A DNA stretch of 56,645 nt, taken from assembly GCA_024137785.1 (NCBI GenBank), contig JAHRHZ010000002.1, forward strand, positions 9,724,049 to 9,780,693, read 5' to 3'. Made by a program: the position numbers and the translations under genes. Under the pieces are notes generated by a model that saw only the letters and a list, made by a program, of their open reading frames with translations, did not search any database and was not told the DNA's origin. This DNA is from Ginglymostoma cirratum. Taxonomy: Eukaryota. Positions 180-56,645 of this stretch are shown here, piece by piece; the stretch's first letter is position 1, and each line of letters opens with the position of its first letter.

Positions 180-3100
180 GTGAGCATTCACACCTGAGAG
201 GGGCTGTACCAGGCTGGGGGTTGCGTTAGAACATCTAACATAACAGAGCGAGGTGTGAGAGGGGCAGTGCCAAGTCGACACTGGGGTCGGGAGGATTGAG
301 GACGGTGTAGTAGGATGGGCAGGGTGAGGGAGGTGATTACGAACAAAAACAGAAGTTGCTGGGAAAGCTGAGCAGGTCTGGCAGCATCTGTGAAGGAAAA
401 ATCAGAGCTAACTTTTCGGGTCCGGTGACAATCCTCAAAACTGAAACGTTAACTTTTTAAAAAATTTTCCTTCACAGATGCTGCCAGACCTACTGAGCTT
501 TTCCAGCAACTTTGCTTATGTTCCTGATTTATAGCGTCCGCAGTTCTTTCGGTTTTTATTTAGATGGTTACGAAGTTGGTGGAGTGGGTGGGGGGGAGGG
601 GTGGTGAGGTGCATGCCTTCACCATTAAGTTAAACCATGATCGATATTTCCCATCTTCACGTCCATCAATTTTCCAACAAAAATCCAGTTTGGTTTTCTA
701 CTAATTTCCACTTGCAACGAGTACCCCTGGGCATTCACAACTTTCTGAATTCAGTGTTTTCACTATCGCTCAACGCAAGGAGAAACTTCCTGACTTCACT
801 GCTGAATGGCCTCGATCTTAATTTATGTGATGTCGACTTGTTTTGTCTGGATTCTGTCAACTACTTGTAACATTTTAAATGCTTAGAAACACACAAAGCA
901 GAGAGATTAGGAGCAGGAGCAGGCCATTCGGCCCTTCGAGTCTTCTCCACCACTCGACATGATCGTAGCTGAATTTCCAACTCCGTACCCTGTTCCCGCT
1001 TGGTACCCCACGTCCTTTGACAATCAGATTAGCTATGACTGTTCTATCCTCGAGGAATGATGAGCTTAAACACGGACAGAAAATGCCAGAGGAACTCAGC
1101 AGGTCCGTAGAGAGAGATTAACGTTTTATGGTTTGAAATGGCATTTCTTCAGAACTGTCAGCCAGTTCAGTCTAGACCCAAAACATTCATCGTGAGAATG
1201 TCTTTCCACAAAACATCAGAACCTTAAACTGGAAATTCTTCAACCGTTCACCAAAGGAACTGGTTCTATCTATCCTGTGACTATTGTGATGTTGAGCTCT
1301 GATATCAAATCTCCTCGATCTTGTCTTCTCCAAAGAAAACACACTGGGTTCTCCAATCCATGCACATTGCTGTGTGGTTCCTCACCACTGGAACTGTTTC
1401 AATTTATCTTTTCGACAAATTATCAAAGGAGTTCTCACAATCCCTAAAGTACTACACCCAGAATTAGAAAGGGATACTCTGATTCAGCCTGCACTATTGC
1501 CCTGTATCAATTCATGAATTATAGAGTCATAGAGATACACAGCATAGTCTAACTCGTCCATGCTGACCAGATATCCAATATAAATCTCATCCCATTAGCC
1601 AGCATTTGGCCCATGCCCCTCTAAACCCTTCCTATTCATATACTCATCCAGATAGCTTTTAAATGTTGTAATCGTACCAGGTTCCACTCCTTCCGATGGC
1701 AGCTCACTTCCATACATACACCACCCTCTGTGTGAAAAATTTGCCCCTTTGGCCCCTTTTAAATCTTTTCCCTCTCATCTTAAACCTAAGCGCTCCAGGT
1801 TTGGACTCCCCCACCCTGGGGTAAAGACCTTGTGTATTTACCCTACCTGTGCCCATCGCAATTTTATAAACCTCTGTAAGGTTTTCCCCCCTCAGCCTCC
1901 GAAACTCCAGGGAAAAGAGCCCCAGCCTATTCAGACTCTCCTTATAGCTCAACCCTTCCAACCCTGGCAACGTCCTTGTAAATCTTTTCTGAACCCTGTC
2001 AGGTTTCACAGCATCCTTCACCAGAATTGCGCAGAGTGTTCCAAAAGTGGCCTAACTGTACAGTCGCAACATGACCTCCCACCACCTGTACTCAATGCAC
2101 TGACCAATAAAGGCAAGTGTACTGAACAACTTCTTCACTATCCTATCTACCTGTGACTCCACTTTCAAGGAACTATGAACACACCCTCCAAGGTCTCTTT
2201 GTTCACCTTGCCATTGAAGCGTTTCAGTCCTGCCCTGATTTGGCTTTCCAAAATGCAACACCTCACGTTTATCTAAAGTAAACTCCATCTGCCATTCCTT
2301 AGCCCATTGGCCGATCTGATCAAGATCCAATTGTAGTATGGGGTAACTTTCTTTGCTGCCAGCTACACCTCCAATTTTGGCGTCAACTGCAAACATAATA
2401 ACCATACCTCCTATGTTGACATCCAGTCATTTATATCAATGACAAAAAGCAATGGACCCAGCACTGATCCATGTGGCACACCGCTGGTCACAGGCCTTCA
2501 GCCTGAAAAGCAACCCTCTACCACCACCCTCTGTCTTCTACTTTTGAGCCAGTTCTGTATCCAAGTAGCTAGTTCTCCCTGTATTCCATGTGATCTAATC
2601 TTGCTAACCAGGCTACCATGAGGAACCTTGTCGAATGCCTTACTCAAATCCATACAGATCACATCCACCACTCGGCCCTCATCAATCCTCTTCCTTACTT
2701 CTTCAAAAAATCTCAATCAAGTTAGTGAGATGAGATTTTGTATTTATTTATCCTTTCTTGGGATATGTGCAACTCTGGCAAGGCTAGCTTTTCTTTCCCA
2801 TCCCAAATTCCTTTTTGGCTTGCCAGGTCATTTCAGAGGGAAGTTAAGAAGCATAGAATCCCTACAGTGTGGAAGCAGGTGATTTGGCCCATTGAGTGCA
2901 CAATGATCCTCTGAAATACATCCCACCCAGACCCACTGTCCTCCCCTATAACCCTACATTTCCTATGGCTAACCCACCTAACTTTCACATTCCCTAGACA
3001 CGATGGGCAATTTAGTATAGCCAATTCACCTAACCTGCCGCACAATGCTATGGAACTGGAGTCACATGCAGGCTTGACCTGTCAAATTTCCTTCCCTCGG

Positions 3101-6100
3101 GGACAGGTGTATGAATGAGTGTGAAGAACACCCCACCCTATCCCATAGGCCTACATTTACCATGGCTGACACATAAGCTGCACATCTCTAGATAACTACG
3201 GGGCAACTTAGCTGCTGAATTACTTTTTTTAGAACTCCTTGTAATATCTTTGCTAAGAAAATTGTGGAGTGACAGGGCTAGGATGGGAGGAGTGGGGTGC
3301 TCTTCAGAGGGTCAGTGCAGACTCAGTAGGCCGAATGGCCTCTTCCTGCACTGTAGGGATTCTGTGCTTTTTGAGATCTGCGTGCACCATATGTTGTCTG
3401 AGCCTGTTGCCTCAATCAAAACTCAGTAAGGTTTGTTTAAAAATCTGTATTTTTTTTAGAAACGGCAAGGCAATCTCTGCATGTTTTCCTCTGTTGATCA
3501 CACAGTTACAACAAAACAGTCTGTTTATGTGCCACATCTAAAGTCATACAATTTCCACAGGTTGGTGACGCAAATTTCAGAGGAGGGATTCAGTTGGATT
3601 GTAGGAGCGCAGTGGGACACTGAAGCCTTGATCATGGCCACTCAGTGAGGGATCTGGGAGGTAGGGGATAAGACTCAGGAGGACCACTGCGAGCAGGGAT
3701 CAATTGTAGGCTTCGTTTTCTGTTGCATTTCAATGTGGAGGACATGACCCTCTTGCCTCTTTTTGTTTCAGACCCTCACTCTCTTCAATACTTGGCCACT
3801 GCTCAGACTGCCACCCACCACCTCCCAGGCTTTATGATCGTCGGTTATGTGGACGGTGTCCAGTTTTTTAACTATGACAGTGATCAGAAGAGATTGATTG
3901 CCCAGGGGCAATGGATGGTGGAAAGTAAGAAGCCCCCATTCTGGGAGCGAAGTGCTGTGCTGGCACAGCAGAAGGAGAAACATTTCGAAACCTACATTGA
4001 GATGATAGCAGCGCGGACCAACCAGTCAGGCGGTGAGCACTTACACTTTTGCCATTCACCATCTTTTTGACAGAAGCTGGGAGTGGAAGGAGCCTGGATA
4101 GGGTCATGGGAAGGAAGTGGCTCCATCTCCATAGAACAAGGGCTGGAACAGAAGGTGTACATTAGACTTCAAAATCATATCTTTATGTATTTTTTAAAGA
4201 AAGCTGTTCCCACCTGGCTGATGTTCCAAAGATTAGGGGAACATATATTTCAGGGTTTGACCGAGGGATGCAGGAAAATGAATAAAGGAAGATCCAACTT
4301 CAGTGAGGCATGTATGGGCTTTTTGACTGGAATAAATCTGTTTGAAAATCCGTAGTTGAACACCGGGCTAAATTCGAAGAAGAGCTGGCTCATTTGCACT
4401 TGGGTTGGCAAGGTGCTTCGGTGGTTAGCGCTGCTGCCTCAGCGCCAGGAATCCAGGTTCAGTTCCACCCTCAGACAACTGTCTGTCTCTGGAGTCTGCC
4501 CATTCTCCATGTGGCTGGGTGGGTTTCCTCAGGGTGCTCCGGTTTCTTCCCACAGTTCAAAGATGTGCGTGTTTGGTGGATTGGCCATGCTAAATTGCTC
4601 ACAGTACCCAGGGGTATGCAGGCGAGGTGGCTTAGCCATGGGAAATACAGGGTTACAGGTTTGGCCGAGGGTTGCTGTCACGGTTGGATGCTCTTCAGAG
4701 GGATTGGTTTGGACTTGTAAGATCAAATGGCCTACTTCCACCCTGTGGAGATTCTATGGAAAGGAGGGCAAACAACTTCAGAGCTCCCTAGATGGAAATT
4801 GAGACAGCAGTTAAAATAAAGATTAAAAAGTGTGCTTATGACAGATTAATAAGTACGGTTGAGAACCAAAAGGAATTTGAAAGGTCTGGGGGGAGGTGAA
4901 AGATGTTAGAGAAGCAAAGAGGGATTATGATAAAAGACTGGTGGTCAACATGAAAGGGTGTCTTAGAGTCTTCTGTGGGGATGTCCATATTAACAGGGTG
5001 GTAAAATTAGGACTGACTAGGGCCCAAATGTTTTTTACACATGGAGGCAGGAGGCATGGCTGATGTGTTAAATGGACACTTTGTATCTGCCTTTATCAAG
5101 GGGGTGAAAGCGGCCTTGGCAAGCAGGACACTCTGTCAGTAAAAAGGTTCAAAATTGATCAGGATGAAGTGTTCAATAGAATATTGATTCTTAAAGTTGG
5201 CACCATGACCACACAAGATGTATTCAATGATAGTGAAGGAGAGTGGAATTTTGCAAGAGCACTGGCCATGATCTTTGAGTTTTCACTCGACTTGGGAGAC
5301 GCCCAAAAATTGGAAAAGTGAAGATTTTGTGTCCTTGTTCAAAAAAGCCTGGAAGGCTAAGGCCTGCAGTTACAGACAAATCAGTTTAAAGTTTGCAGTG
5401 GGGAAGCTTGTAGAAACAATTATTCATAGTCAGACAAATAAAAGTGGCTTGTAGACAACCAATGCTGGAGTTCACATTGGGTCAGACAGTATCTATGGAG
5501 AATGACGGCAAGTTAATGCTTTGAGTCTAAATGACTCTTCTTCAGACCTGGAGTGAAGTGCAGAGGTACCAGCATTTATGCTATAGTTTGGGGAGGGAGG
5601 GTGTGGAGGTAGTGGAGTGTAGAGTGCTGGCAGAGAAAAGATGTTGATAGTTCAGATTAAGTGGTCGGAATGTGAGAATGGCAGTACAATAGTGTGTCTA
5701 GCTGCCAGACTTGAAGGGACGGATAGTCCCTCCGGGGCGGGGGGAGAGGAGAGAGGATATGTGACTGAGAATGTAACAAGCTAAAAGAAAAGGAAGGAAT
5801 GGTTCACAAATTCTCACATTCCGATCACTTAATCTGAACTATCTGCCAGCACCCTACACCCACTACCCCCACCCCAACGCCCAAACTATAGCATAAATGC
5901 TGTCCCCTCCACACTCCACTTAGCTCTGATGGAGACGTCTAGACTCGAAACATTAGCTTGCTCTCTCTTCATGGATGCTGCCTGACCCACTCTGATCTCC
6001 CAGTACTGGTTGTTTTCAGTACAAGTTCCAGCATCTGCCACAATTTTCTCCCAGAATAAAAGTGGCCTGTTTTTAGGGAAGGATTCTAAAGGGGAAATCA

Positions 6101-17330: not shown

Positions 17331-18574
17331 AACTGTTAATGAGTCTGCAAACAGAAAGCTATAAACCTCCAAAGGAGGGAAATCAAGGAAAAGTCAACAC
17401 ATTTGAAGATAGGCCAGAGATCCTCCATGATCACAATATATTCAGGGGTTAAGAGGTTTCCTGCCCTGCCATTCCCAGCTCTGGGAATTTTGCACATACA
17501 ATGGATCTTGGTCAGCTGGCTTATTCCCAATGGGTTTTGTTGTGGGCTTTTGATTTGATTTCAATTTGTTCATAGGCTGTAGGTTGTTGTTTGTACATCC
17601 CAGATTTATTCCAGATTGCCATTGCATTTATTGAGGTCTCGCGTCTGCTCTTTATTCCCTCACTCAGTAACCATTGTTTCTTCCTCTTCCGCAGTGGCCT
17701 ACCATATCCGACTGGGAATCCACAGACGCCATTTCCCAAGGCCAGCGGCTGAAATCAAGGAGAGATTTGTGGAGGACTGATTCCTGCTCAATCTCAAATT
17801 CTGGTGTGTTTTGAAAATCTGACTCCAAATCGTGGCAATATTAACATTTCACTGTGAAGCCCTGACCTGCTAATGTTTAAGCTGCATGATCATGTTTGAC
17901 CCCCTTCACTGGTGCTGTTCATCAGTGGGATAGTCCCAGACCTCAAATCGAATATCTCTGCACCTTTAGTACTCGAATAACCCTTTCTTATAGTAACAGA
18001 ACATGGCAATTCTTGTCGAGACTGATTGATTGAACCCAAACACTGCCTGACTGTGACATTATCTGTCCAAATGCAAGAGAGGACCAGACGACAGCACCGC
18101 AGGATAAAGGGACATCAATTTAAAACCGAATTGAGGAGGAGTATCTTCTCTCCGAGGCTTTGGAATTCTTTGCCGCAGAGAGCTATGGGAGCAGAGTCCT
18201 TGTGCATACTTAAAGCTAACGTAGATCTATTTGGGTGGAATCAACGTTTATGGGGAGAAAGGAGGAAAGTCGATGTGAAGAGTGTTCTTCTTACTGAATA
18301 GCAGAGCAAGCTCAAGGAAGGGAAAGGAATGTTCCTGTCTCTATTTGTTATGGTCTTATAAGCCTTCTATCACAAGCCCTTCTCTTTGCCCAGGTCAAGT
18401 CGCTATCTCAGAATCTCTTGACTTCACATGTTCCCCACGTTCGGACGAGCGCCCAATGCTATGTCTGACCCTAAAGCAGGGACATGGTGGTGTGCAGGGC
18501 TCCTGTCTGGAATTCAAGTCTCCACCATTCTGTCCAGGCCCCTCGGATTCTCCTCACGTTCTTATCTTTTTGAA

Positions 18575-18860
18575 TAAAAGCAAAGTACTGTGGATGTTGG
18601 AAATCTGAAGCAAACAAAGGGGACTCTGGAGAACCTCAGCAGGCCTAGCAGCATCTATGGAGATAAAAAGCAGAGTTAACATTTCAAGTCCGATCTGACT
18701 CTTCAGAAATGGAGAGAAGAATGGAACGAATTCTTCTGTTCGGCGGTATAGTCATGTCTGACTGGAGACATTAACTCTGTTTCTCCACGGATGCTGCCTG
18801 AGATTTTCGGTATTCTGTGTGTTTGATTCTTTTGTTTTCAGTCGGGCTGCCGGCTTCGTC
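18575..18860. mobile_element. Palindromic hammerhead-bearing element (decayed) within the putative MHC 3' UTR
   Basis: actgtggatgttggaaatctgaa...ctcagcagg...gttaacatttcaagtcc...ctcttcag, then the inverted arm cattaactctgtttctccacggatgctgcctg. Confidence 0.65.
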
Positions 18861-22383: not shown

Positions 22384-22649
22384 GAATCTGGAATTAAAGT
22401 CTAATGATGACCATGAAACCATTGCAGATTGTTGGAGAAGCCAATCAGGTCTATTAAAGCCATTTAGAGGAGGAAATCTGCCATCCTTACCTGGTCTGGC
22501 CTACTTGTGACTCCAGATCTGTAGCAATGTGATTGATTCTTGACAGCTGTCTGGGCAATAGGAGATAGGCAATAGAGGTTGGCCTAGACAGAGACGTCCA
22601 CATTGCATGAGTGAATTAAAAAAAAGTGTATTCCTCTACTGAAAAGTGG

Positions 22650-22778
22650 AACACTTAAATGGTGGAGATCTGTAGCTAACACAGAAAATGCTAGAGAAAC
22701 TCATCAGGTCTAGCAGCATCTGTGGAGAGTGAATGAGTTGACATTTTGATTCCACTATGGACCTTCTTCAGAACTGAG
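22650..22778 (-). mobile_element. Hammerhead-bearing short element (single arm)
   Basis: On -: agtt-CTGAAGA-aggtcc atagt ggaatc-AAAATGTC-aact, with a 4-bp stem I (agtt/aact). Confidence 0.65.
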
Positions 22779-23448: not shown

Positions 23449-23548
23449 AGAAAGGGTCTAGGCCCGAAACGTCAGCCTTCCTGCTCCTCTGATGCTGCTT
23501 GGCCTGCTGTGTTCATCCAGCTCTACACCTTATTATCCTGATTCTCCA
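23449..23548 (+). mobile_element. Hammerhead-bearing element (subfamily A), right arm
   Basis: agggtctaggcccgaaacgtcagcc...ctgctgtgttcatccagctctacacc. Confidence 0.8.
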
Positions 23549-30022: not shown

Positions 30023-30815
30023 AAGTTAATGACAAAGACTCTTGTGTCTGGGGCAAAATTTCAAAATTGTGGGTGCTGCAATGTCTTCATAGCGGTTTTA
30101 TACTCCAATATCTATCCCTCTATCAATATATCAATAAAACTTGGATGTGTTGTGAACCGTGAGGAGAATAATGTTGCATTCATCTTCAAAATGACATTGA
30201 CAAATTGGTGGAATGGACAGACAAGTGTTAGATAAAATCTAATGCAAGAAAATATGAAGTGATTAATTTTGGTAGAAAGAACATGGAGACACAAAATGAA
30301 ATTAAAAGTAATGAGTTTATTCTTCAGTCAATATAGGGTGCTGCTGTGATTATATCTTAAGTACTGTGCACAGTGTCGGTCATCTTGTTTAAAGAATGTT
30401 TCATTAGACTAATACCTGGAATAAGAAGAATGTCTTATGAGGAAAGATTGGCTAGATTTTGATCCGCTGGAGAGAAGAAGAGCAACAGGTAAATTGATTG
30501 AAATTTATTGTCCTGAATTGTGTTTCAACTTGCAAAGAAATTGATTTTCAGACTCAAGAATGGAACCCATTTGCATCCTGGAGACTGCTGCATATTCCTT
30601 TGTCTCTTTAACGTTTTTATCTAGCTTTCCCGCTTCCTCTTAAACGCACCCTATTTTAAATACCAAAATGCTTTTTCAAAGAGACAGCATTCTTGCTTTT
30701 GTGATGATTCCAATGTATTATATACACATAGTCGATAAGAAGCTGTCTCACTACTAATGCAGACCGAAATATATCTTAAAAGAATGTGGGATTGATCAGA
30801 GAATCAGATGAGCTT

Positions 30816-30900
30816 GAGATAACAAGGCGTAGAGCTGGATAAACACAACAGGCCAAGCAGCATCAGAGAGGGAGGAAGGCTGACATTTCGGGCCTAGACC
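30816..30900 (-). mobile_element. Hammerhead-bearing element (subfamily A), single arm
   Basis: gataacaaggcgtagagctgg...tttcgggcctagacc; 7-bp TSD tgagctt at 30809 and 30901. Confidence 0.82.
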
Positions 30901-36067: not shown

Positions 36068-36158
36068 AGGGTCTAGGCCCGAAACGTCAGCTTTCCTGCT
36101 CCTATGATGCTGCTTGGCCTGCTGTGTTCATCCAGCTCCACACCTTGTTGTCCCATCT
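36068..36158 (+). mobile_element. Hammerhead-family element (subfamily A), single arm
   Basis: gggtctaggcccgaaacgtcagc...catccagctccacaccttgtt. Confidence 0.8.
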
Positions 36159-41293: not shown

Positions 41294-41305
41294 ACAAACA
41301 TAAAG

Positions 41306-41470
41306 CTCAGCAGGTTTGGCAGCATCTGTGAAGGAAAAAACAGACTCAACGTTTCGTGTCCAGTGACCCTTCCTCAGTTTTTTTCCTTCACAGATATTGC
41401 CAGACCTGCTTGTCCAGCAACTTTGCTTTTGTTCCTGATTTAAGCATCTGCAATTCTTTCGTTTTTTATT
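41306..41470. mobile_element. Palindromic hammerhead-bearing element (subfamily B)
   Basis: 13-bp TSD gacaaacataaag (41293-41305 and 41471-41483); on - CTGAGGA-agggtcactggacac-GAAACGTT. Confidence 0.85.
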
Positions 41471-41504: not shown

Positions 41505-41645
41505 TCCAGCCCTGAAGAAGAATCATATCAGACTCAAAATGTTAGCAATGATTTTGTCTCCGCCAATACTGTCAGAGCTGCTGAGTTTCTCCAACATTCT
41601 CTATATTTGTTTCAGATCTACAGAATCCGCAGTATCTTGCTTTTA
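41505..41645 (+). mobile_element. Hammerhead-bearing element, single arm (GAGTC/GACTC stem type)
   Basis: CTGAAGA-agaatcatatcagactc-AAAATGTTagc...ctgctgagtttctccaac. Confidence 0.65.
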
Positions 41646-41667
41646 TCACATGCGAGACAGTATCAAA

Positions 41668-42416
41668 GTTAGTAGGAACTGCAGATGCTGGAGCTGCTGC
41701 GATAACAAGGTGTAGAGCTGGATGAACACAGCAGGCCAAGCAGCATCAGAGGAGCAGGAAGGCTGACGCGTCAGGCCTAGGCCCTTCTTCTTTTCTAAAG
41801 AAGGGTCTAGGCCCGAAGCGTCAGCATTCCTGCTCCTCTGATGCTGCTTGGCCTGCTGNNNNNNNNNNNNNNNNNNNNNNNNNNNNNNNNNNNNNNNNNN
41901 NNNNNNNNNNNNNNNNNNNNNNNNNNNNNNNNNNNNNNNNNNNNNNNNNNNNNNNNNNNNNNNNNNNNNNNNNNNNNNNNNNNNNNNNNNNNNNNNNNNN
42001 NNNNNNNNNNNNNNNNNNNNNNNNNNNNNNNNNNNNNNNNNNNNNNNNNNNNNNNNNNNNNNNNNNNNNNNNNNNNNNNNNNNNNNNNNNNNNNNNNNNN
42101 NNNNNNNNNNNNNNNNNNNNNNNNNNNNNNNNNNNNNNNNNNNNNNNNNNNNNNNNNNNNNNNNNNNNNNNNNNNNNNNNNNNNNNNNNNNNNNNNNNNN
42201 NNNNNNNNNNNNNNNNNNNNNNNNNNNNNNNNNNNNNNNNNNNNNNNNNNNNNNNNNNCAGCAGGCCAAGCAGCATCAGAGGAGCAGGAATGCTGACGCT
42301 TCGGGCCTAGACCCTTCTTTAGAAAAGAAGAAGGGCCTAGGCCTGACGCGTCAGCCTTCCTGCTCCTCTGATGCTGCTTGGCCTGCTGTGTTCATCCAGC
42401 TCTACACCTTGTTATC
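41668..42416. mobile_element. Palindromic subfamily A element spanning a probably artefactual gap
   Basis: 11-bp TSD acagtatcaaa at 41657-41667 and 42417-42427; the two gap flanks are exact reverse complements. Confidence 0.85.
41859..42258. other. Assembly gap (400 N)
   Basis: Run of N. Confidence 1.
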
Positions 42417-43285
42417 ACAGTATCAAAACACCTCTTGCAGTATTAAAAATGACGTTATTCTCATGTCGTGTTGCTTCTTTCATCAATGACCTTAAATCTC
42501 CTGATTCTCGTTTGGCAGTTTTTTGAGATTCCTCAGGGATTTGCATACCCTGATCAAATCTCCTGTCAATCTTTACTTCGCCTTGAAAAGTAATCTTAAA
42601 CTTTCCAATCTATCAATTTAACTGAAGTTCCTCATCTTGGAAACAGTTGCACACATCTTTCCTGCGCCCTTTGTAATGCCATTGGTAAGGCCCTAAAGTA
42701 TGGTCCTAGCATTAGACACCATGTTCGATTTATTGGTGAAATAATGTGTCATACAAGTCAACGTAGCATCTTGCCTTTCTACTTTCTGCCATTTTACATA
42801 AAACACAAAAATTTGTATGCTTCGTTAACCACTTTCTTAACTTTTACTGAATTCAGTGGATATGCAGCAAAGACCAATCGGTCCTGCAACCTTGATAAAC
42901 TTACATATTGTATCTTATGCTGTTTTCCAAAAAGCATGACTAACTTTGCACTTCTCCTCATGAAATTTTGATAGCCACTTTTTTGCCCATTTCACCAACA
43001 TATTTATGTTTCTGAGATGCTCCACCCTATGTACTTCAAGGTTCACAATGCTTCCTACTACCCTTTTGAATTCCATGAGTTATAACTTTGATCATGAGTC
43101 AGTTGCAGCGCACTTTACGACATATCCTTTGAAGCCCATGTAGCTCACATAAACCACATCACCCTCATTAATGGTCACATCTTGATCTTAAAACAATCTT
43201 CAGCAATATGGTTAAACAATCTGACTAGTTTTAGACAGTCGATTTATCTTCACACATGTTTACAAACAAGGATTCAAAATTTGCA

Positions 43286-43404
43286 GAGATAGTAGGAACG
43301 GCAGATGCTGGAGAATCTGAGAAAGCAAGGTATAGAGCTGGATGAACACAGCAGGCCAAGCAGCATCAGACGAGCAGGAAAGCTGACATTTCGGGCCTAG
43401 ACCC
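43286..43404 (-). mobile_element. Hammerhead-family element (subfamily A), single arm
   Basis: gagatagtaggaacggcagatgctggagaatctgag...tttcgggcctagaccc. Confidence 0.8.
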
Positions 43405-44655: not shown

Positions 44656-45410
44656 TGTCTTGGATCAGAGCGTGTATCCAAGCGGTTCTTTTCCGATTTG
44701 GTAAATATAATTGAGAGAAGTCTCGACCACAGCAATTTGCTTAAATATAAATGTTTATTAAGTAAGAATAATGATTATAATGGCAAAAACAAATGATTAC
44801 AGTGGTAATAATAAATGGAAAAGAAAAGAGGGAAAGGAAGCAACAAGTCTCAAGACTCTTTAGAAAAAGTAACAAGGCTTATGTTCTTCTGACTGTCGGG
44901 GACCCCTCACTTGATGCCTGGTCTAGAGGCTTCGATTCGTTCTTAGCGCATTTCACGATTCGGAGCCAAAGCGAAGTCCAGCAGCAACAGCTTGGACCGA
45001 AACTTTCTCTCTCTTGTGCAGTGTGGCAAACAAAGCAGATACAGCAAGACAAAACTGCTGGCTGGTACGGGGAACAGGAAACTAAAGAACTGCGAATGCT
45101 GTAAATCGGGAACAAAAACAGAAGTTGCTGGGAAAGCTCAGCAGGTCCGGCAGCATCTCCAAAGAAAAAAAATCATTTTGAATTAACGTTTCGGGTCCGG
45201 TGACCCTTCCTCGGAACGGGGTGAGAAAACATGTGCAGGTGTCATCTTCGGCTGGGAAAGGAATATTTGCAGGACTCATTCAGGGTCATGCAGCTTTTTA
45301 AGTATTATTCTGAACTTTCCCAGCATATCCCCCCATCCTGTCCAATCTATTTTCTCATGCAGCTGTCGAATATCATCATTAACATTTGGCCCTTCGACCC
45401 ATCCTACATA
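44656..45410 (-). mobile_element. Solo LTR with a nested hammerhead element; same family as 13119-13672
   Basis: Perfect 5-bp TSD ctatg at 44651-44655 and 45411-45415; colinear with 13119-13672 apart from an insert at about 45084-45218. Confidence 0.82.
45084..45218 (-). mobile_element. Hammerhead-bearing element (subfamily B) inside the LTR
   Basis: On -: gtt-CCGAGGA-a-gggtc-accg-gaccc-GAAACGTT-aat; absent from the other LTR copy. Confidence 0.85.
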
Positions 45411-46148: not shown

Positions 46149-46286
46149 GGTAACAAGGTGTGGAGCTGGATGAACATAGCAGGCCAAAGCTTTCCTGCTG
46201 CTATGATGTTGCTTGGCCTGCTGTGTTCACCCAGCTCCACACCTTGTTATCTTGGATTCTCCAGCATCTGCAGTTCCTATTATCTC
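46149..46286. mobile_element. Palindromic subfamily A element with the central core deleted
   Basis: Perfect 15-bp TSD agaaaagcagcacaa at 46134-46148 and 46287-46301. Confidence 0.88.
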
Positions 46287-46340
46287 AGAAAAGCAGCACA
46301 ATATCAGTTATAGAAATAATAGCTGAACATTAAGACTCAC

Positions 46341-47310: not shown

Positions 47311-48297
47311 AGTGCTCAGTCCCATGACAACATTCAGTCAGTTTGCTCATCCAAGAACATGTTCCCATGATCCATCTCCATGTTGCATGATTCGTTTTGC
47401 AGTGTCAATGGGTAATGATGCTTTTAGTTATGGTCTTCGTAAGAAATACATGTTCAATGCATAATTGGTAGAATCCTTTGCATTATCAACCTGGAACTTA
47501 ACTGGTACCCCAAATCTTGTTCCTATTCACTTAGCATGACTTTGCCTTTAATCTTTCTTGATTATCAGCCAAAGTTGCAGGAAATCAAATCAGTTTGCCA
47601 TGACAAAAAAGGAAATAACTTAGACGTTCTCATGTTAACTACTTTGGTAACATCAAGAGCTAACAGAATACTACAACAAGATGTAGCAAAGCCCATCCAA
47701 AACTCTTTATTCTAAATTTCACAATTCTCACTCATTTCAATCCTTAGCCTCATATACCCTTCGCCAAACAGGCTTCCATTATTTTAGAGGACGTTTTGCT
47801 TACCTTTGAAAAGTAGAATGAGAAAGTCAAATACAAAATTTTAAAGATGATTTTATTCTCTCTGATTCACATTCCAGTTCCTTCGTCTCATACATTGATT
47901 TTTTAAAGAGAAGCAAAAATCACCTGGCTGTGCTAACTGTCCATGCATTGATTAAAAAAAACAAATTAAATAACTTCATCGTGTTACATATCTAGATTCA
48001 TCTGTTTCTTTTTTAAGCAAAGTGTTACGCATGCAGTAAATGCATATGATTATGGAGGACATCCGGACAGATAAAGGTAGCTACTGCAAACAGACTTCAT
48101 GCAATTTGACCACAATGCAACCCGATAGCGGAAAACACCTGGTTATTCTATACTTACAAACATTGCAGTGATCTTCATGATTTAGAGGTTGAGTTCAACT
48201 CATTTGTTTTAAATGCCCTTGAGGTGGAACAGAAAACAGCATAGCGCTGTTGAACAAATATGCGGCTCACACTTTTAACAAAGGACAAAAACACCTA

Positions 48298-48515
48298 AAC
48301 AAGAACAGAAGTTGCTGGAAAAGCTCAGCAGATCTGGCAGCATCTGTGAAGAGAAATCAATGTTAACGTTTCGGGTCCGGTGACCCGGAACTGAAGCGTT
48401 ATTTTTGATTTCTCTCCACAGATGCTGCCAGACCTGCTGAGCTTTTCCAGCAATTTCTGTCTTTTTGTTTACAGCATCCGCTGACTTACAGCATCCGCAG
48501 TTCATTCAGTTTTGA
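48298..48515. mobile_element. Palindromic hammerhead-bearing element (subfamily B)
   Basis: acagaagttgctggaaaagctcagcag...aacgtttcgggtccggtgaccc...ctgctgagcttttccagcaa. Confidence 0.85.
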
Positions 48516-48769: not shown

Positions 48770-48830
48770 AGAGATAAAAGGTACTGCAGATGCTGGAGAA
48801 TCCGAGATAACAAGCATGGGGCTGGATGAA
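48770..48830 (-). mobile_element. Truncated subfamily A element
   Basis: Perfect 15-bp TSD ctacataattctatc at 48755-48769 and 48831-48845. Confidence 0.85.
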
Positions 48831-49456: not shown

Positions 49457-52400
49457 TCATAAAATGTATCTTGCAATTTGAGAAAAGGGATATTTGACCA
49501 CACTCTTCAACTGCTCTCTGAATTTAGTTTGGATTATGGCATAAATGCATGTATTTGTGCAGCAACTCAGGAGCTGCAGCATGATTCCCAATCTGCTAAC
49601 AAAATGAGGTGCAATTGCAGGCACATAATGTGAATACCATAAATGAGCCCAAACTGAATATACAATATGTATTGCCCACAAAAATATGAAATTTCCCGAA
49701 ATCACAAATAATAAAATAATAGATTTCATTCGGTTCTCTATCTCTGTGTCTCTGAAGCTCACTGTATTGCTGTGAGCCTGGCGTCTACTGCGTGCTTTAG
49801 TGGATACCAAAATATGTCTGACAGTAAAACCATTGAGCAGAAGAATCAGAACAAATGGGAGACATGGAGTTACAATGTTTTGAAGCAACTCGATTATTAT
49901 CCGCTGCCATACATCAAAAACATCAAATGTTGTTTCACAAAACCAAGGTAAGTTCACAAGTAAATACCGGCCTGTGAATAAAAAATACCACACAGTGTTT
50001 TTTAAAAAGCTCAACACAGTCACAGTTCCAAGAACCACAGCCACAGTTTTCTCAGCACAATACTTAGTTTTCAGTCTCTGGTAGCAAATTGCCACAAATC
50101 GATCAAACGTGAAAGTGACAGTGAACCAAACAGAACAGTCTGTTGCTGCATAAACAAAACATGCGTGGATATTGCACACAGGGAAGGATTGTATAAAATA
50201 AAAGCGTTTCCAATAAACAATAGGAATCTGCCTTAAAATCAGTTCAGTGGTAAGCACTATTAGATCTGCTGCTGCCATGGCCACCTGATAATGAGTTACA
50301 CCTTTGGAGAGGCCACACTTTCCCCTTGATAAGATCCCAATCGTCACTGCGTTAACTGTAAGGAATAGGAATAAACAGCTTTATTAATCATCTGCTAGTT
50401 GCAATGCTATAAGTATAACTGATTAATTACTCCATCCATGGATCTATATTAATATGTCAGTGATATTGTTAACTGCTGTAGACAGGGACTGAATTAAGTA
50501 AATTCTCAATTATCTGGAAGTGTTTATTTATAAAGCAAAAATAAAATGACCAAAAGCATTTTATAGACTCAATAAAATGATTGCAGTTCTGACCATTTTT
50601 TCCCTGTATTTGCAAAATAAAGAACATCATTTTCATATATAATATAGTGCAGAAGAGGTAAACTGCAAATTTGATGACGTAACATTAAGCTCAATGTAGC
50701 AAGCTTACAGTGGAAATTAAAATTCATAAAATTCATAGAAACATAAAATTTCATAAAGAGAAACTGTTCCCCTTGAAGTAAGATGGAAGAAGATTGGGGG
50801 AGTAGCAGAAAGCATAGGGGATTGTCAAAGAATACAGGAGAATATAGATAGACTGGAGAGTTGGGTGGAGAAGTGGCAGATGGAGTTCAATCCAGGCAAG
50901 TGTGAGGTGATGCATTTTGAGAGGTCTAATTCTAGAGCAAACTATACTGTAAACGGAAGAGCCTTGGGAAAAGTTGATGAGCAGCGAGATCTGGGAGTTC
51001 AGGTCCATTGTACGCTGAAGGTGGCTGCACAGGTGGATAGAGTGGTCAAGAAGGCATATGGTATGCTTGCCTTCATCGGACGGGGTATTGAGTATAAGAG
51101 CTGGCAGGTCATGTTAAAATTGTACAAGACTTTGGTTCGGCCGCATTTAGAATACTGTGTACAGTTCTGATCGCCACATTACCAAAAGGATGTGGAAGCT
51201 TTGGAAAGGGTACAGAGAAGGTTTACGAGGATGTTGCCTGGTATGGAAGGTGCTAGCTATGAAGAGAGGTTGAGTAGGTTAGGATTGTTTTCATTAGAAA
51301 AAAGGAGATTGAGGGGGGACCTGATTGAGGTCTTCAAAATCATGAAGGGTATAGACAGGGTTGATAGAGATAAGCTTTTTCCCAGGGTGAGGGATTCAAT
51401 AACAAGGGGTCACGCGTTCAAGGTGAGAGGAGAAAAGTTTAAGGGGGATACATGCGGAAAGTACTTTACACAGAGGGTGGTAGGTGCCTGGAACGCGTTG
51501 CCAGCAGAGGTAGTAGAGGCAGGCACGGTAGATTCATTTAAGGTACGTCTGGACAGATGCATGAGTAGGTGGGGAGCAGAGGGATACAGATCCTTAGGAA
51601 TTGGGCGATAGGTTTAGACAGTGGATTTGGATCGGCACAGGCTTGGAGGGCCGAAGGGCCTGTTCCTGGGCTGTAAGTTTTCTTTGTTCTTTGTTCTTTG
51701 TTCTTTGAAGAAAATGCACAACTTTCTTGTAGTTAGAAAAGAAACATTATTGAAAAAAGCAAAATCTTTTTCATACATCAAATGTTAAATTCTAGATGCA
51801 CCATCTATGTGGTGGAGGCAGGATCAGTGCGAACAGGATTAAGGATAAATCAGACTGTTATCCAAAATGGATGAATATTCTGTGATGCAGACAGTAAAGG
51901 TAATGATACCAATTTTACTAAATTAACTGATCATACCATTATGTAAATAATGTCACTGATGTTTTCACAATGACACTGAGAGATCTAAAGTTCTTCTTGC
52001 TGTCAATAAGCAGCTATTGGGTATGTATCTGAAGGACTGCACACTATAAAATACCTAACAATTACCTACTACTACAAAATAGCATCGTGTAGAAATTTTT
52101 ACAATAAGGAGGAAAACTGAACAGAAAGTTAGTGCTTCCATGATCTTAAAGATTCCCTTACCTGTAAAAAAGGTTGGCATTCTATTACATCAAATCATTG
52201 ATTGGAAAGGAGTACACGGAAAGTCTAAAGAAAATACTTTTCAAGGTAATGCACTACTGTTATGATACCACACTATAGACAATATGAAAAATTGCTGTGA
52301 TAACAAGATGCTATTAAATGACCTGACTTCAGAAACATTACAGTACGCCTCTAGACACACCCTGCACATGCGTGTCTTGAACAGAGCATCAAGTATCTGT

Positions 52401-53460: not shown

Positions 53461-54958
53461 TCTGCTAATCCAGCAATCGCATCAATTGGGATGGGGAGGT
53501 GGTATTATCTGGACATTATATCCTTGTGGAATGCCCTACCAGCAAATAATTACGCATTAAATGTTGCAAAGTAGCTACGGGGCACTCTATCTGGTGAACC
53601 ACTTCTCACCATCGCCCAGACACAGCAGGATGTCAGAACACTAACAAAGGTTCCATATTCTAAAATTAACTCCCTATGTCACCCACCCAACCCCTCACAG
53701 GACCAGGTAGATTCCAGAAACAGAATGAGTCTGTATTAGGGAGTTTCCTTCATTATCCAGCACAAACCATCTCCAAACGCCCTGCCCAATGCGCATCTCA
53801 CCAACAACACTACACCCCTTCCCACACAAGCACTCACACATGTACACAGCAACATTTGTCTACCCCAAACTCACTCTTCCAACTGTGCATTTGTATTGTT
53901 GACTTTGGAGCGTCACTGACGGATCAGGAAATGTGTTCCAGCCAAGAAATCTGAGCTTCAGTTGATTGACATCCCAGTAATGTCAAATGTTTCTTATTTG
54001 AATGTGAAAGTCTTCATAGCTGCAATAGGCACTCTCATAAGAAGGAGACAACTCTCTGCTGAGTTTCGTTGAGGGTCGCCGTCATTGTGAGCCCAGGATG
54101 GGAACTGAGCCTACAATCCTGACAGATCATCCAGCCAAACAGCTAACTGAGCTAACCGACACTTAACTGCCTAGTTGGCTGATCCAAAAAGGTTGCCTGG
54201 TTTGTTTTCTAAACCTATCACTAAGAAACGTTGAAAGTAACTGATTCACTTTGGGATCTTGTTTAGAACGGTTGTCACTTGTGGAGATGCTGGTGATCTG
54301 GCCTGTAGTCTCGAGATCCAGCTGGAGACCGTGCTGCCTCATTTTAAAGAATATCATATCAAAACGTACAGTCAATCAAATAGGTGAGAGGCAGTTGGTG
54401 GAATCTTTTCAGGAAGGCGGGCCTCGGGGCAGTGGACATGCCTGCCAACAGGCATCCAACGAATATATTCGTATTGATTTCCACTCAGCAACCTCACGGG
54501 GAGCAAGTCACTGCTGCGTGGAATTCAACCATCGGAGTCCCAGATCCTTGTTCGATTCATTGATATTTCTAAGCAATAACTGCAGACATTTCATGATGTT
54601 AAAGCTGTGGATAAAGAATGTGGGCAGTCGAGGAAGATTTATCAACAGGAGAAGGGAGGTGTCTTCTTATTTTTATTCTTCTCCCCACCCCCGACAGAAA
54701 GTCACTGACTAAAAACCACGCCGGGTTCAATTTTTACATTCCCCATGTAGCTATCCAAGTACAGATGACTGAGTGTTCAACCACCTACCACCCACCCAAT
54801 AAAAACCTCATGCACCACCCCCCCCCTCCAACCCCGCCGTTTCTGAACACAACATGGAATGAGGTAGATATATCTAACCAATGCCAATTTCTGGGAATTT
54901 ACGTCCCTGCACGGTCTGGATTCTGATTCCAACAAAAGGTGTATTCTATTCATTAGTT

Positions 54959-55114
54959 GGATGAACACAGCAGGTCAAGCAGCATCATAGGAGCAGGAAA
55001 GCTTGACGTTTCGGGCCTAGACCCTTCATCAGAAATGTTGCTTGACCTGCTGTGTTCATCCAGCCCCATGCTTGTTATCTCGGATTCTCCAGCAGCTGCA
55101 GTACCTTTTATCTC
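54959..55114. mobile_element. Palindromic subfamily A element with an intact hammerhead core
   Basis: Perfect 15-bp TSD ttctattcattagtt (54944-54958 and 55115-55129); on - ttt-CTGATGA-a-gggt-ctag-gccc-GAAACGTC-aag. Confidence 0.9.
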
Positions 55115-56529
55115 TTCTATTCATTAGTTCTCGGTTTTGTATCCCTGATCCACTGATGGTGCGTTAACTGCCGAGTATTTGCAGCTCTTTCTATTTCTTT
55201 TGTCTGGGACAGTCAACATCTACAGTAATTTCCGTTTCCTGTGATTTCTGAGCCGGAGTGTTTGAGCCAGTAGCGTCACGGATCCGAAGAAAACAGTTCG
55301 TTCCACTCTTTTGTTTCGAACCACAAATAGATGAGACATGTTGATTTCTCAGGTAATGTATTTTACTTGCACCAAATATGAAACAAAGTAGACGTTGATC
55401 GAATAACAATTATGTTTGAACTACAAGCCAACATCATCGAAACGTTTGTATTATCTACATTTATGTTCACATCTGCATCATAAACCTGCGTTTGTTGATA
55501 TATTTTTAATACATTTTGCATTTTGTTGCTTTTGCTCTCTCCACTGTGAGGCTGTCTTACACTTTAGGTTGGGTAGAGCTGTGTTTTGCTATTCTGAATA
55601 TTATTTTATAGTAAGCAACTGCTGTATTCTATGATTCGGGATTAATTCAAATTTTGGAGGGGAAATATCTCTGCTATCGACTTTATCAATCAACTAAACA
55701 CATAGAGACCAAAAACAAGCTTGATAGCTGGTACAACACAATAAAATATCAGGAACATTCACTAGCATTTTGTCACAGTATCCAAGTTTCATTACATATC
55801 TTCAGGCTCGTTATGACAATCAGAGCACTTCCAATATTCCATGGATTCGAACTGCACTTATTTTACATAAATATGGTGGATTATTATCGATAAAGGAATG
55901 CTTAATTTGATGGTTTTATGTTTTTATTCAAGTGAGGATTATTTTAATGCTAATAAAGATGAGTAATTCATTTGAGGAGCCAATCAGATGCATTGACATC
56001 AGGCTAATCCCACATGATTGTGAATAATTAGTAGAGCTCCTCTTTTAATTTCCAAAGACTCTTTCTGAAATAAGGAATTAGCTATTATCAAAATACCGAA
56101 AAGACATCTGTTATAACATTCAAAGAGTGTACACATGATGAGAACGTCATGTCATTTTAATGATTTGAAGATATTGGATAGGTTATGTTGCACTTTAGGG
56201 AGGCAGTGATATCTTGTTAATGTGCACATTATCGTCAAATGAAAAAATCCTCATAGAACAACTTTATGCTGTATTTGATGATGCTTAAATATTGGGTAAG
56301 TTTACCTTTGCATTCCTTCACAAATGTACTCTAATAAGCAGCATCAATTTGATCAATATGATGCATATAAATTAGTTGGTATGTTTAAAATGTCATTCTG
56401 ATATTACATATTAGTGTCAACTTGATACATAATCTGGCACAATTAAAAAAAAATCCCTCTGTACATTTTGAATATAAATTAAGGAAAATCAAGTTAACGA
56501 TATTTATGAAGCGTGCTCAAGATTATACT

Positions 56530-56645
56530 GGAGATAATAGGGACTGCAGATGCTGGAGAATCCGAGATAACAAGGTGTGGAGCTGGATGAACACAGCAGG
56601 CCAAGCAGCATCTGATGAAGGGTCTAGGCCCGAAATGTCAAGCTT
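56530..56645. mobile_element. Palindromic subfamily A element, cut by the window end
   Basis: Left arm, then CTGATGA-agggtctaggccc-GAAATGTC on + at 56612-56639. Confidence 0.85.

What the first reader, a model, noticed from the sequence alone, without database searches (positions are those of the whole stretch)
54959..55114. Abundant short shark retroelements carrying a minimal hammerhead ribozyme (best copy; about 20 in the window)
Seen in sequence: on - at about 55000-55035 the element reads UUU-CUGAUGA-A-GGGU(CUAG)GCCC-GAAA-CGUC-AAG. That is the hammerhead catalytic core (CUGANGA...GAAA), a stem II hairpin, a loopless self-complementary ACGU stem III, a GUC cleavage triplet and a short stem I. 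The same motif recurs at about 405-445, 1120-1155, 5510-5550, 5920-5960, 18675-18710, 22735-22775, 23449, 30880, 36068, 41345-41380, 41510-41545, 41760-41825, 43380, 45180-45218, 48360 and 56612. Established: minimal type-I hammerheads with a palindromic stem III that cleave as dimers are a hallmark of Penelope-like element pseudo-LTRs and of metazoan retrozymes. Inference: this is a high-copy, non-autonomous, ribozyme-bearing retroelement system in a shark, easily mis-annotated as MITEs. I cannot tell whether it has already been described.
Basis: partly seen in the sequence, partly recalled or inferred. Interest (0 to 1): 0.9.

Follow-up and report, generated by a model that had tools for sequence, protein, structure and literature searches.

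The report
Penelope-type hammerhead mini-insertions in shark
The flagged 156-base repeat is one of about twenty very short retro-insertions from Penelope-like retrotransposons in this shark window; their ancestors carried a minimal hammerhead ribozyme, a kind of element already described in other animals, and most copies here are decayed relics.

Summary
Window 55005-55032 (- strand) reads CUGAUGA-A-GGGU(CUAG)GCCC-GAAACGUC. The element 54959-55114 is flanked by a perfect 15-bp target-site duplication.

A covariance model finds 14 full-length motifs plus about 5 truncated ones. The superfamily covers 5.3% of the window. Across five diverged families the catalytic core is conserved, N7 and loop II vary, and helices I and II co-vary. 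This is a real hammerhead of the published minimal, helix-III-less kind.

The copies carry the published insertion signature of Penelope-like elements:
- a constant 3' end with variable 5' truncation;
- two alternative 3' ends about 26-33 nt apart (the "tail");
- head-to-head inverted arms inside a single target-site duplication.

The retrozyme reading is not supported here. No direct tandem occurs in the window. Only 4 copies keep an intact core, because two CpG sites in the core have decayed. Poly(A) RNA-seq shows abundant passive transcription but no read ends at the cut site.

No RT/GIY-YIG gene is in the window, so the link to an autonomous element remains structural. The scan's first readers noted the same elements in many other windows of this genome. 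Verdict: a new member of a known kind, of modest interest.

The parts
54959..55114 (-). The flagged element (family 1). It is a fold-back insertion. The sense arm runs from -34 to +49 relative to the cut site and contains the whole hammerhead. It is joined head-to-head to an inverted arm, +19 to +100, that carries the long 3' end.
   Evidence: As RNA it folds into a 23-bp perfect hairpin, z = -5.0.
55005..55032 (-). Hammerhead core CUGAUGA-A-GGGU(CUAG)GCCC-GAAA-CGUC. The predicted cut lies between C55005 and A55004.
   Evidence: exact match. R1 score 46.9 bits. All invariant core bases are present.
54944..54958 (.). Target-site duplication, left copy (15 bp).
55115..55129 (.). Target-site duplication, right copy (15 bp).
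56531..56645 (+). Family 1 fold-back with the same arm-to-CUGAUGA junction as the flagged copy. The core is intact (GAAAUGUC). It is cut off by the end of the window.
43285..43404 (-). Family 1 solo copy, -20 to +100. It starts at the first G of stem II, so it has no CUGANGA box, and it has the long 3' end.
   Evidence: 8-bp target-site duplication with one mismatch.
36068..36155 (+). Family 1 solo copy, -20 to +67 (short 3' end).
30815..30900 (-). Family 1 solo copy, -19 to +67 (short 3' end), with a 7-bp target-site duplication TGAGCTT.
23452..23548 (+). Family 1 copy, -22 to +76. It abuts the assembly gap 23049-23448.
41667..41858 (.). Family 1 fold-back with its apex at 41785-41802. Both arms reach the stem II/GAAACGUC region. 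The core is mutated (CUAAAGA, GAAG). It runs into the gap 41859-42258.
42259..42420 (.). Mirror-image copy of the previous fold-back on the other side of the gap. It may be an assembly effect at a palindrome.
46149..46286 (.). Family 1 fold-back without a hammerhead. The long arm starts exactly at +1, the predicted cut site. 15-bp target-site duplication at 46134-46148 and 46287-46301.
48770..48830 (-). Family 1 tail-only solo copy (+38 to +100), with a 15-bp target-site duplication.
45082..45220 (-). Family 2 solo copy with the whole motif (CCGAGGA, U4 mutated) and the long 3' end.
   Evidence: (48.2 bits).
41302..41459 (.). Family 2 fold-back. The sense arm has an intact core (CUGAGGA...GAAACGUU) but no helix I. 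15-bp target-site duplication at 41293-41307 and 41471-41485.
341..560 (.). Family 2 fold-back (core UUGAGGA...GAAAAGUU, mutated), with a 10-bp target-site duplication.
48297..48506 (.). Family 2 fold-back whose axis of symmetry lies in the stem II loop. It has no CUGANGA box.
   Evidence: (33.9 bits, not a training copy).
18572..18801 (.). Family 3 copy with an intact core (CUGAAGA...GAAAUGUU) at 18678-18706 (-), plus a short inverted piece at 18756-18801.
22640..22777 (-). Family 3 solo copy. G12 is lost (CAAAA).
41506..41650 (+). Family 3 solo copy. G12 is lost.
5455..6052 (.). Family 4 head-to-head pair. The arms reach 145-155 nt upstream of the cut site. It lies inside one 16-bp target-site duplication (5437-5452 and 6055-6070), in the intron between the alpha1 and alpha2 exons of an MHC class I gene. 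Both cores are mutated.
1020..1158 (-). Family 5 solo copy. G12 is lost and stem II has decayed.

Best explanation
These are short retro-insertions made by Penelope-like elements (PLEs). Each copies the stretch of PLE RNA that holds the minimal hammerhead ribozyme and the roughly 70-100 nt after it, down to the place where the PLE reverse transcriptase starts.

Shown here:
- The copies share a constant 3' end with two alternative termini.
- They are cut short at variable 5' positions.
- They carry variable target-site duplications.
- They are often built as two inverted arms inside one target-site duplication.
- Across diverged families the ancestral sequence is a hammerhead under structural constraint.

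Inferred from published PLE biochemistry: the PLE enzyme nicks both target strands and primes cDNA on both. It starts at one of two internal RNA sites, which gives the short and the long 3' end (the 'tail'). The two cDNAs meet head-to-head, which gives the fold-back.

The hammerhead belongs to the source element's RNA. There it would act as a dimer and/or with protein help. The genomic copies seen here are mostly dead relics. They are truncated in the core or inactivated by CpG decay at G12 and in the ACGU palindrome, and they are transcribed only passively inside other transcripts.
For: Hammerhead:
- Column identity over 12 copies from 5 families is 0.92 for C3U4G5A6/G8A9 and 0.89 for G12A13A14. 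It is 0.42 for N7 and 0.45 for loop II. H17 is only C or U. The bulged A before helix II is at 0.92.
- For helices I and II, 78.8% of cells pair, against 68.3% in shuffles and 15-43% when the partner is slid. Six of 9 pairs show double changes.
- In RNA reads, the places inside the family 1 core listed as varying are N7 (21%), a loop base (28%) and C11.1 (7%).
- The architecture equals the PLE min-HHR: short helix I, long helix II with an unpaired 5' base, and no helix III (PMC4209133).

Retro-insertion:
- Target-site duplications are 7-16 bp and differ in sequence.
- The 3' ends recur at +67/68 or +74/75, and at +98 to +103. The 5' ends range from +38 to -155.

PLE signature:
- The two 3' ends lie 26-33 nt apart. 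This fits the '30-40 bp tail, often at one end only' (PMC8557442) and the two adjacent internal RT start sites of the Anolis element (PMC11167929).
- Six of the six fold-backs with both outer ends readable pair one long-ended arm with one shorter arm inside a single target-site duplication. This fits an enzyme that cleaves and extends both strands and the 'inverted 5'-truncated copy' of PLEs.
- The geometry matches Anolis. An AUG lies inside CUGAUGA 25 nt before the cut (26 in Anolis). The 3' ends lie 92 and 125 nt after it (111-118 in Anolis).

Host: the 8 best protein-level matches are whale-shark gene models. PLEs are reported in shark genomes (PMC8455134).
Against: - No RT or GIY-YIG open frame was found in the window. 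All 136 open frames of at least 75 aa were scanned, and the only RT piece is LINE-type. No PLE protein matched the translated tail. The link to an autonomous PLE therefore rests on anatomy and literature, not on a shared terminus shown here.
- Rfam's hammerhead models do not score these sequences.
- The monomer minimum-energy folds are not hammerheads and are no better than shuffles.
- RNA-seq shows no pile-up of ends at the cut site.
- The longest arm is only about 250 nt and many 5' ends cluster: -20 in three family 1 solos, and -35 to -39 in families 3 and 5. Plain random 5' truncation of a 3-kb element does not predict this.
Confidence: 0.75

Rival explanations
1. This is a dedicated non-autonomous element, SINE-like or retrozyme-like. 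Short master RNAs of about 130-160 nt consist of little more than a hammerhead plus the RT-recognition tail, some as inherited fold-backs. They are transcribed on their own and amplified in trans by a PLE reverse transcriptase.
For: - Two copies that are 10% diverged (55038 and 56612) share the same fold-back junction and the same extra A after GUC.
- About 550 RNA reads from many start positions carry such arm-to-CUGAUGA junctions (table 5).
- The 5' ends cluster at -20, and at -35 to -39.
- No long copy lies in 56 kb, although the superfamily covers 5.3% of it.
- A 2026 preprint argues that animal retrozymes are non-autonomous PLE derivatives and finds them in one chondrichthyan.
- A first-reader note, untested here, reports a tandem pair of hammerheads elsewhere in this genome.
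Against: - There is no direct tandem of motifs in the window. All neighbouring pairs are inverted.
- Junction positions among reads are many and diverse. Most reads crossing that point are the plain linear form: about 11,900 loose ends against about 550 junction reads.
- Reads fall equally on both strands, and 96% run on into unrelated sequence. That is passive transcription, not a discrete small RNA.
- No tRNA-like head was found.
- The two sharing copies lie only 1.4 kb apart.
Confidence: 0.3
2. The copies are run-off products of internal RT initiation near the 5' end of ordinary PLE transcripts. This is a mechanistic variant of the best explanation. The RT start sites (+67 and +100) lie only about 100-140 nt from the transcript's 5' end. 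Priming at the 5'-proximal site therefore gives complete but tiny cDNAs, and their clustered 5' ends mark the transcription start.
For: - Families 3 and 5 lose homology at -35 to -39 in independent copies.
- The Anolis enzyme starts internally, and 5' truncation of the template shortens the product.
- A pLTR promoter is described for PLEs.
Against: - Family 4 arms reach at least -155.
- Family 1 solo copies start at -20, inside the ribozyme.
- No pile-up of read starts was seen (table 6).
Confidence: 0.3
3. A chance resemblance. This would be an ordinary SINE or LINE tail, or a MITE, that happens to contain CUGANGA...GAAA.
For: - The loose pattern is not enriched over chance.
- Rfam is silent.
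- Monomer folds are not hammerheads.
- The elements look like palindromic MITEs.
Against: - The conservation pattern is core-specific, and both helices co-vary across five diverged families.
- The bulged base, the long helix II and the ACGU palindrome match the published PLE min-HHR point by point.
- Target-site duplications are long and variable, and there are non-palindromic solo and 5'-truncated copies with the same 3' end. That excludes cut-and-paste MITEs.
- There is no tRNA-like part.
Confidence: 0.05

Closest known systems
Minimal hammerhead ribozymes (min-HHR) of Penelope-like element pseudo-LTRs (Cervera & de la Pena 2014, PMC4209133; dimer cleavage by Lunse et al. 2016/17, as cited in PMC6765202)
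   Same: - Type I topology.
- Short helix I (3-4 bp).
- Helix II of 4-6 bp with an unpaired base at its 5' end.
- No helix III or loop 3, only a palindromic ACGU that can pair between two molecules.
- GUC/GUU cut site.
- Thousands of dispersed single motifs 'probably related to truncated PLEs', with pairs 100-700 bp apart on opposite strands.
   Different: - The host is a shark, and no shark was named in that paper.
- The density is far higher: about 20 per 56 kb here, against about 4,000-9,000 per genome reported for coelacanth and Xenopus.
- Activity was not tested here.
Anolis carolinensis Poseidon element PAc (Frangieh et al. 2024, PMC11167929)
   Same: - The hammerhead sits at the pLTR/ORF junction.
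- A start codon lies about 25 nt before the cut site.
- There are two adjacent internal RT start sites about 90-125 nt after that codon, which make the optional 'tail'.
- Both DNA strands are cleaved and extended.
- No RNA-seq ends are seen at the cut site.
   Different: - In the shark no RT gene was linked to the motif.
- Whether the open frames through the tail are the start of a PLE ORF is unproven.
- The sequences are unrelated at the level I could test.
Metazoan non-LTR retrozymes (Cervera & de la Pena 2020, as cited in PMC8557442; Li, Clavereau & Pollet 2026, bioRxiv 10.64898/2026.07.22.740005)
   Same: - Short, non-coding, type-I hammerhead-bearing repeats related to PLE pLTRs.
- Monomeric 'solo' derivatives are known.
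- They are present in one sampled chondrichthyan.
   Different: Retrozymes are defined by direct tandem units that yield circular RNA. In this window every multi-motif structure is inverted, and no unit-length or circular RNA signal was seen.
Schistosoma Sm-alpha / Sj-alpha SINE-like elements with hammerheads (reviewed in PMC6765202)
   Same: They are short, high-copy, hammerhead-bearing retroposons.
   Different: Those carry canonical, efficient hammerheads with tertiary contacts and a pol III-type promoter. Here the motif is the minimal kind, and no tRNA-like head is present.

Membership tests
Hammerhead ribozyme (type I, minimal/PLE kind) | Conserved core C3-U4-G5-A6-N7-G8-A9 ... G12-A13-A14 with A15.1-U16.1 and H17 | tested here: met
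   The core is present exactly in 4 copies: 55005, 56612, 41348 and 18678. Core columns are 0.89-0.92 identical across 12 copies of 5 families, against 0.42 at N7. H17 is only C or U.
Hammerhead ribozyme (type I, minimal/PLE kind) | Helices I and II supported by compensatory changes | tested here: met
   78.8% of cells pair, against 68.3% (sd 2.3) in shuffles and 15-43% when slid. Six of 9 pairs show changes on both sides. Caveats: only 12 sequences, and the structure was derived from them.
Hammerhead ribozyme (type I, minimal/PLE kind) | Match to a curated hammerhead covariance model | tested here: not met
   No Rfam family matched at gathering score over the window. No hammerhead matched at E<=10 in 54700-55400. 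This may be because the loopless helix III departs from canonical hammerheads; that is an inference, the models were not inspected.
Hammerhead ribozyme (type I, minimal/PLE kind) | Self-cleavage at H17 (as dimer or with protein) | not testable with these tools
   The only indirect look was poly(A) RNA-seq, which shows no pile-up of ends at 55004/55005. The same negative result is reported for Anolis. Monomer minimum-energy folds are not the active fold.
Penelope-like element (insertion product) | Constant 3' end, strong 5' truncation, variable target-site duplication | tested here: met
Penelope-like element (insertion product) | Optional 30-40 bp 'tail' extension, often at one end only | tested here: met
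   The 3' ends fall at +67/68 or +74/75, and at +98 to +103, a difference of 26-33 nt. In the six fold-backs with both outer ends readable, one arm is long and the other shorter. The feature definition comes from PMC8557442 and PMC11167929.
Penelope-like element (insertion product) | Inverted 5'-truncated copy adjacent, forming inverted repeats | tested here: met
   There are eight head-to-head structures. Five of them lie inside a single 10-16 bp target-site duplication.
Penelope-like element (insertion product) | Same termini on an element encoding a telomerase-like RT plus a GIY-YIG endonuclease | tested here: inconclusive
   None is in the window. The host genome could not be searched.
Non-LTR retrozyme | Direct tandem repeats, each unit with a hammerhead | tested here: not met
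   All neighbouring motif pairs in the window are on opposite strands. A tandem case elsewhere in the genome is only an untested first-reader note.
Non-LTR retrozyme | Unit-length circular or linear RNA with ends at the cut site | tested here: inconclusive
   There are no such ends or back-joints at the cut site in a poly(A) library. That library type is poorly suited to circular or small RNA.
MITE (cut-and-paste) | Terminal inverted repeats with a short target-site duplication of fixed length | tested here: not met
   Target-site duplications range from 7 to 16 bp. Solo, non-palindromic and 5'-truncated copies share one end.

The most novel reading that the evidence does not exclude
The mini-elements are not mere debris but a self-sustaining class of hammerhead-headed 'PLE-SINEs', some as inherited fold-backs. 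Their defined 5' ends (at stem II, or 6-9 nt before C3) come from RT run-off on very short templates. If this window is typical, extrapolating its 5.3% coverage implies roughly 10^5-10^6 copies and several percent of a shark genome (an extrapolation from one window, not a measurement). That would make the hammerhead by far the most abundant ribozyme-derived sequence known in a vertebrate.
Probability: 0.25. Interest if true: 0.5.

Novelty: new member of a known kind. Interest (0 to 1): 0.3.

Why it matters
The finding gives shark genome annotators a concrete rule. Short 'palindromic MITE-like' repeats with 7-16 bp target-site duplications and a CUGANGA...GAAACGUY core are Penelope-like insertion products and should be classified as such.

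It also offers independent, in-genome support, in a lineage distant from lizards, for two recent biochemical claims about PLEs. The first is two adjacent internal RT start sites, which produce the 'tail'. The second is priming on both target strands, which produces inverted arms inside one target-site duplication.

If the density seen here holds genome-wide, these elements are a sizeable fraction of shark DNA. They would also put a great many hairpin-forming sequences into introns and transcripts. None of this changes what is known about hammerhead function.

Tried and rejected
- Rfam at gathering score over the window, and at E<=10 around the best copy, gave no hammerhead.
- Plain pattern counts: the loose pattern is not above chance. 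The strict pattern finds only 2 exact copies.
- Thermodynamic folding of five 48-52-nt cores gave no hammerhead fold, with z about 0. I did not model the dimer.
- Search for an autonomous partner:
  - The 10 largest ORFs and all 136 open frames of at least 75 aa were scanned against Pfam. Only MHC I, C1-set, 7tm_1 and one weak RVT_1 hit appeared. A motif search of the six frames found only a LINE-type RT fragment, near 2560-2720.
  - A profile of the open frame through stem II and the tail was scored against 1.84 billion proteins. The 29 hits are short gene models or unrelated long proteins. None of the 10 that I scanned has an RT domain.
  - A metagenome scan for the family 1 core found nothing.
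- RNA evidence for cleavage: 55,295 reads laid, but no start or end pile-up at the cut site and no unique-flank expression of this locus.
- tRNA-derived SINE idea: ARAGORN finds nothing.
- The weak R1 hits at 35733 and 2726 were read and dismissed as chance.
- The Lunse et al. paper is not held.
- The long-range pairing GAUGCUG/CAGCAUC in the tail is conserved in all families but shows no compensatory change, so it says nothing either way.

Full report
THE OBSERVATION

The interval 54959-55114 is bounded by a perfect 15-bp direct repeat at 54944-54958 and 55115-55129. It is therefore one insertion with a target-site duplication (TSD).

I aligned 12 cores (A1) and built a covariance model (R1). 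I then scored every position of the window with it. This gave:
- 14 full-length matches at E<=2e-7. These are the 12 training copies, which match by construction, a mirrored duplicate at 42289-42328, and the untrained 48359-48394.
- 5'-truncated matches at 23452, 36068, 30876 and 43379.

BLAST with one real copy of each family as query shows that the superfamily covers 2,969 of 55,845 non-N bases (5.3%). This falls in 18 merged loci, about 20 insertions.

Simple motif counting is not the evidence. A loose pattern gives 41 hits against 40 expected. With a stem II requirement it gives 7 against 2.45. Rfam is silent.

IS IT A HAMMERHEAD?

The 12 cores come from five families that differ throughout. 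Column identity by region is:
- 0.92 for C3U4G5A6/G8A9.
- 0.89 for G12A13A14.
- 0.92 for the single unpaired A before helix II.
- 0.42 at N7.
- 0.45 in loop II.
- 0.56 in the flanks.
- H17 is always C or U.

For the named structure (helix I of 4 bp, helix II of 5 bp), 78.8% of cells pair. That compares with 68.3 +/- 2.3% in shuffles and 15-43% when the 3' partner is slid. Six of nine pairs show changes on both sides, for example AACU/AGUU against AGCU/AGCU in helix I and G-C against A-U in helix II. The caveats are the small number of sequences and that the structure was read from them.

Independent support comes from RNA reads of thousands of family 1 copies. Inside the core, the places listed as varying are N7 (U/A, 21%), one loop base (28%) and C11.1 (7%). 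The tail next to it has sites at 28-57%.

The architecture is point for point the 'min-HHR' that Cervera and de la Pena defined for Penelope-like elements (PMC4209133):
- a short helix I;
- a long helix II with an unpaired 5' base;
- no helix III or loop 3, only the palindrome ACGU.

That kind is thought to act as a dimer, cleaves poorly in vitro, and in Anolis needs the element's protein (PMC6765202; PMC11167929). In line with that, the monomer minimum-energy folds here are not hammerheads and are no better than shuffles.

WHAT CARRIES IT?

I give positions relative to the predicted cut, with +1 as the first base after GUC/GUU.

3' ends. All copies end at one of two places:
- Family 1: +67/68 (...CTTGTTATCTC) or +98 to +100 (...CCTTTTATCTC).
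- Family 2: +74/75 or +101 to +103.

5' ends. These vary:
- +38 at 48770-48830.
- +1 at 46188.
- -19/-20 in three family 1 solo copies, which therefore lack CUGANGA.
- About -35 to -39 in families 3 and 5.
- At least -155 in family 4.

TSDs run from 7 to 16 bp and differ in sequence. A constant 3' end, 5' truncation and variable TSDs mean target-primed reverse transcription, not a cut-and-paste MITE. The tails of all families are homologous, with 52% column identity and the blocks CACAGATGCTGCCAGACCTGCTGAG and CCAGCATCTGCAGTTCTTT.

THE FOLD-BACKS

Eight loci are head-to-head pairs of arms. Five of them lie inside a single TSD of 10-16 bp:
- 334-343 / 565-574
- 5437-5452 / 6055-6070
- 41293-41307 / 41471-41485
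- 46134-46148 / 46287-46301
- 54944-54958 / 55115-55129

Each of these is one insertion event. In the six with both outer ends readable, one arm ends at the long site and the other at the short site or earlier.

This is the published PLE insertion signature. [quoted passage not shown]

The biochemistry of the Anolis element PAc explains the signature (PMC11167929):
- The enzyme cleaves and extends both target strands.
- It starts reverse transcription at two adjacent internal RNA sites, which define the tail.
- These sites lie 111-118 nt into the ORF.
- The ORF begins at stem II, 26 nt before the hammerhead cut.

The shark geometry is the same. An AUG lies inside CUGAUGA 25 nt before the cut, and the two 3' ends fall 92 and 125 nt after it.

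The flagged element itself has:
- a sense arm from -34 to +49, holding the whole hammerhead;
- an inverted arm from +19 to +100.

The 23-bp hairpin it forms is thus a by-product of how it was inserted. It is not an extended helix I.

WHAT THE COPIES ARE NOW

Only four copies keep every invariant core base: 55005, 56612, 41348 (which has lost helix I) and 18678. The commonest lesions are G12 to A, seen four times, and changes inside ACGU. Both places are CpG sites, so this looks like methyl-CpG decay. The decay mechanism is inferred; the base changes are.

All neighbouring motifs are on opposite strands. No transcript of these loci could therefore bring two sense ribozymes together.

RNA EVIDENCE

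One poly(A) RNA-seq run kept as raw reads (X7) put 55,295 of 12.9 million reads onto the two family 1 copies at 54959-55114 and 56531-56645:
- Reads fell equally on both strands.
- 96% of what was laid ran on into unrelated sequence.
- Depth in the unique flanks was zero.

The family is therefore abundant in transcripts, but passively so, and this locus is silent. No place showed a pile-up of read starts or ends, including the cut site. The same negative result is reported for Anolis.

About 550 reads carry arm-to-CUGAUGA junctions like the one shared by the two local copies. About 11,900 loose ends at the same point continue as the plain linear form. Inherited fold-back subfamilies therefore exist but are a minority. 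The second raw run (X8) shows only a clonal transcript with an embedded copy.

LINK TO AN AUTONOMOUS ELEMENT

This is the weak point.
- No RT or GIY-YIG frame is in the window. The only RT piece found is a LINE-type fragment.
- Two reading frames stay open through the tail in most family 1 copies. A profile of one of them (A4) was scored against 1.84 billion proteins and found 29 hits. The eight best are short whale-shark (Rhincodon typus) gene models that have swallowed the repeat. None of the 10 hits that I scanned has an RT domain.
- That result confirms a shark host and shows the family in whale shark. It does not tie the family to a PLE gene.
- PLEs are reported in shark genomes (PMC8455134).

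COMPARISON AND NOVELTY

- Dispersed min-HHRs 'probably related to truncated PLEs', including pairs 100-700 bp apart on opposite strands, were described in 2014. That paper counted about 4,000 in coelacanth and 9,000 in Xenopus.
- Animal retrozymes have been argued to be non-autonomous PLE derivatives, with one chondrichthyan sampled.

What this window adds:
- shark families of the motif;
- a much higher local density;
- a clean genomic echo of the two RT start sites and of double-strand priming.

The retrozyme label fails its defining test here, because there are no direct tandems.

First readers of this scan noted the same elements in many other windows of this genome. Those notes are unchecked. 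I tested the ones that lie on my own window.

UNEXPLAINED

- Three independent family 1 solo copies begin exactly at the first G of stem II.
- One inverted arm begins exactly at +1.
- Families 3 and 5 lose homology at -35 to -39.

RT run-off at a transcript 5' end close to the internal start site would explain the last point. It would also explain why the copies are so short, but it is untested.

Real copies served as references throughout.

Noticed in passing
window 3672-4067 (+) and 7515-7820 (+): These look like the alpha1 and alpha2 exons of an MHC class I gene (Pfam MHC_I, E 6e-17 and 2e-22). A C1-set hit also turned up among the window's open frames. The roughly 3.4-kb intron between the two exons holds the 600-bp family 4 fold-back.
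   Followed up: partly
window 49460-50380 (-); 24968-25426 (-) and 24503-24964 (-): One intact single-exon rhodopsin-family GPCR frame (7tm_1, E 5e-16). A second one is split by a stop into an N-terminal and a C-terminal half, so it is probably a pseudogene.
   Followed up: partly
window 41792-41858 and 42259-42325, around the gap 41859-42258: The two sides of a 400-N gap are exact mirror images of the same family 1 fold-back, but with different outer flanks. This looks like an assembly problem at a long palindrome, as the PLE literature warns.
   Followed up: no
window about 2560-2720 (-): A LINE-type reverse-transcriptase fragment (...VDVICMDLSKAFDKVPHGSLVSKIRSHGIQGEL...). The same LINE motif follows a family 1 copy in the whale-shark gene model P0001. 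These are probably just neighbouring insertions.
   Followed up: partly
family 1 solos 43404, 36068/36069, 30900; arm 46188: The 5' ends of three independent solo copies fall on the first G of stem II (-20/-19). One inverted arm starts exactly at the predicted cleavage site (+1). Random truncation does not predict either.
   Followed up: partly
tails of all families, e.g. window 43285-43384 (-), about +29 to +35 with +83 to +89: A 7-bp long-range complementarity GAUGCUG/CAGCAUC is kept in 11 tails of four families. It brackets the region between the two 3' ends. It shows no compensatory change, so it is uninformative.
   Followed up: partly
family 1 copies, e.g. window 43287-43403 (-): Two of the three reading frames stay open through stem II and the tail in most family 1 copies. 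One starts at the AUG inside CUGAUGA. Whale-shark gene predictions have incorporated the repeat in at least the eight best of 29 hit clusters (all eight that were looked up).
   Followed up: partly
run X8 laid on window 54958-55003 and 56575-56612: A 'TRANSCRIPTOMIC OTHER' library holds about 650 near-clonal 301-nt reads of one specific transcript that contains a family 1 copy. The loose-end consensus agreement is 0.92-0.99. It may be an amplicon or a targeted library.
   Followed up: no
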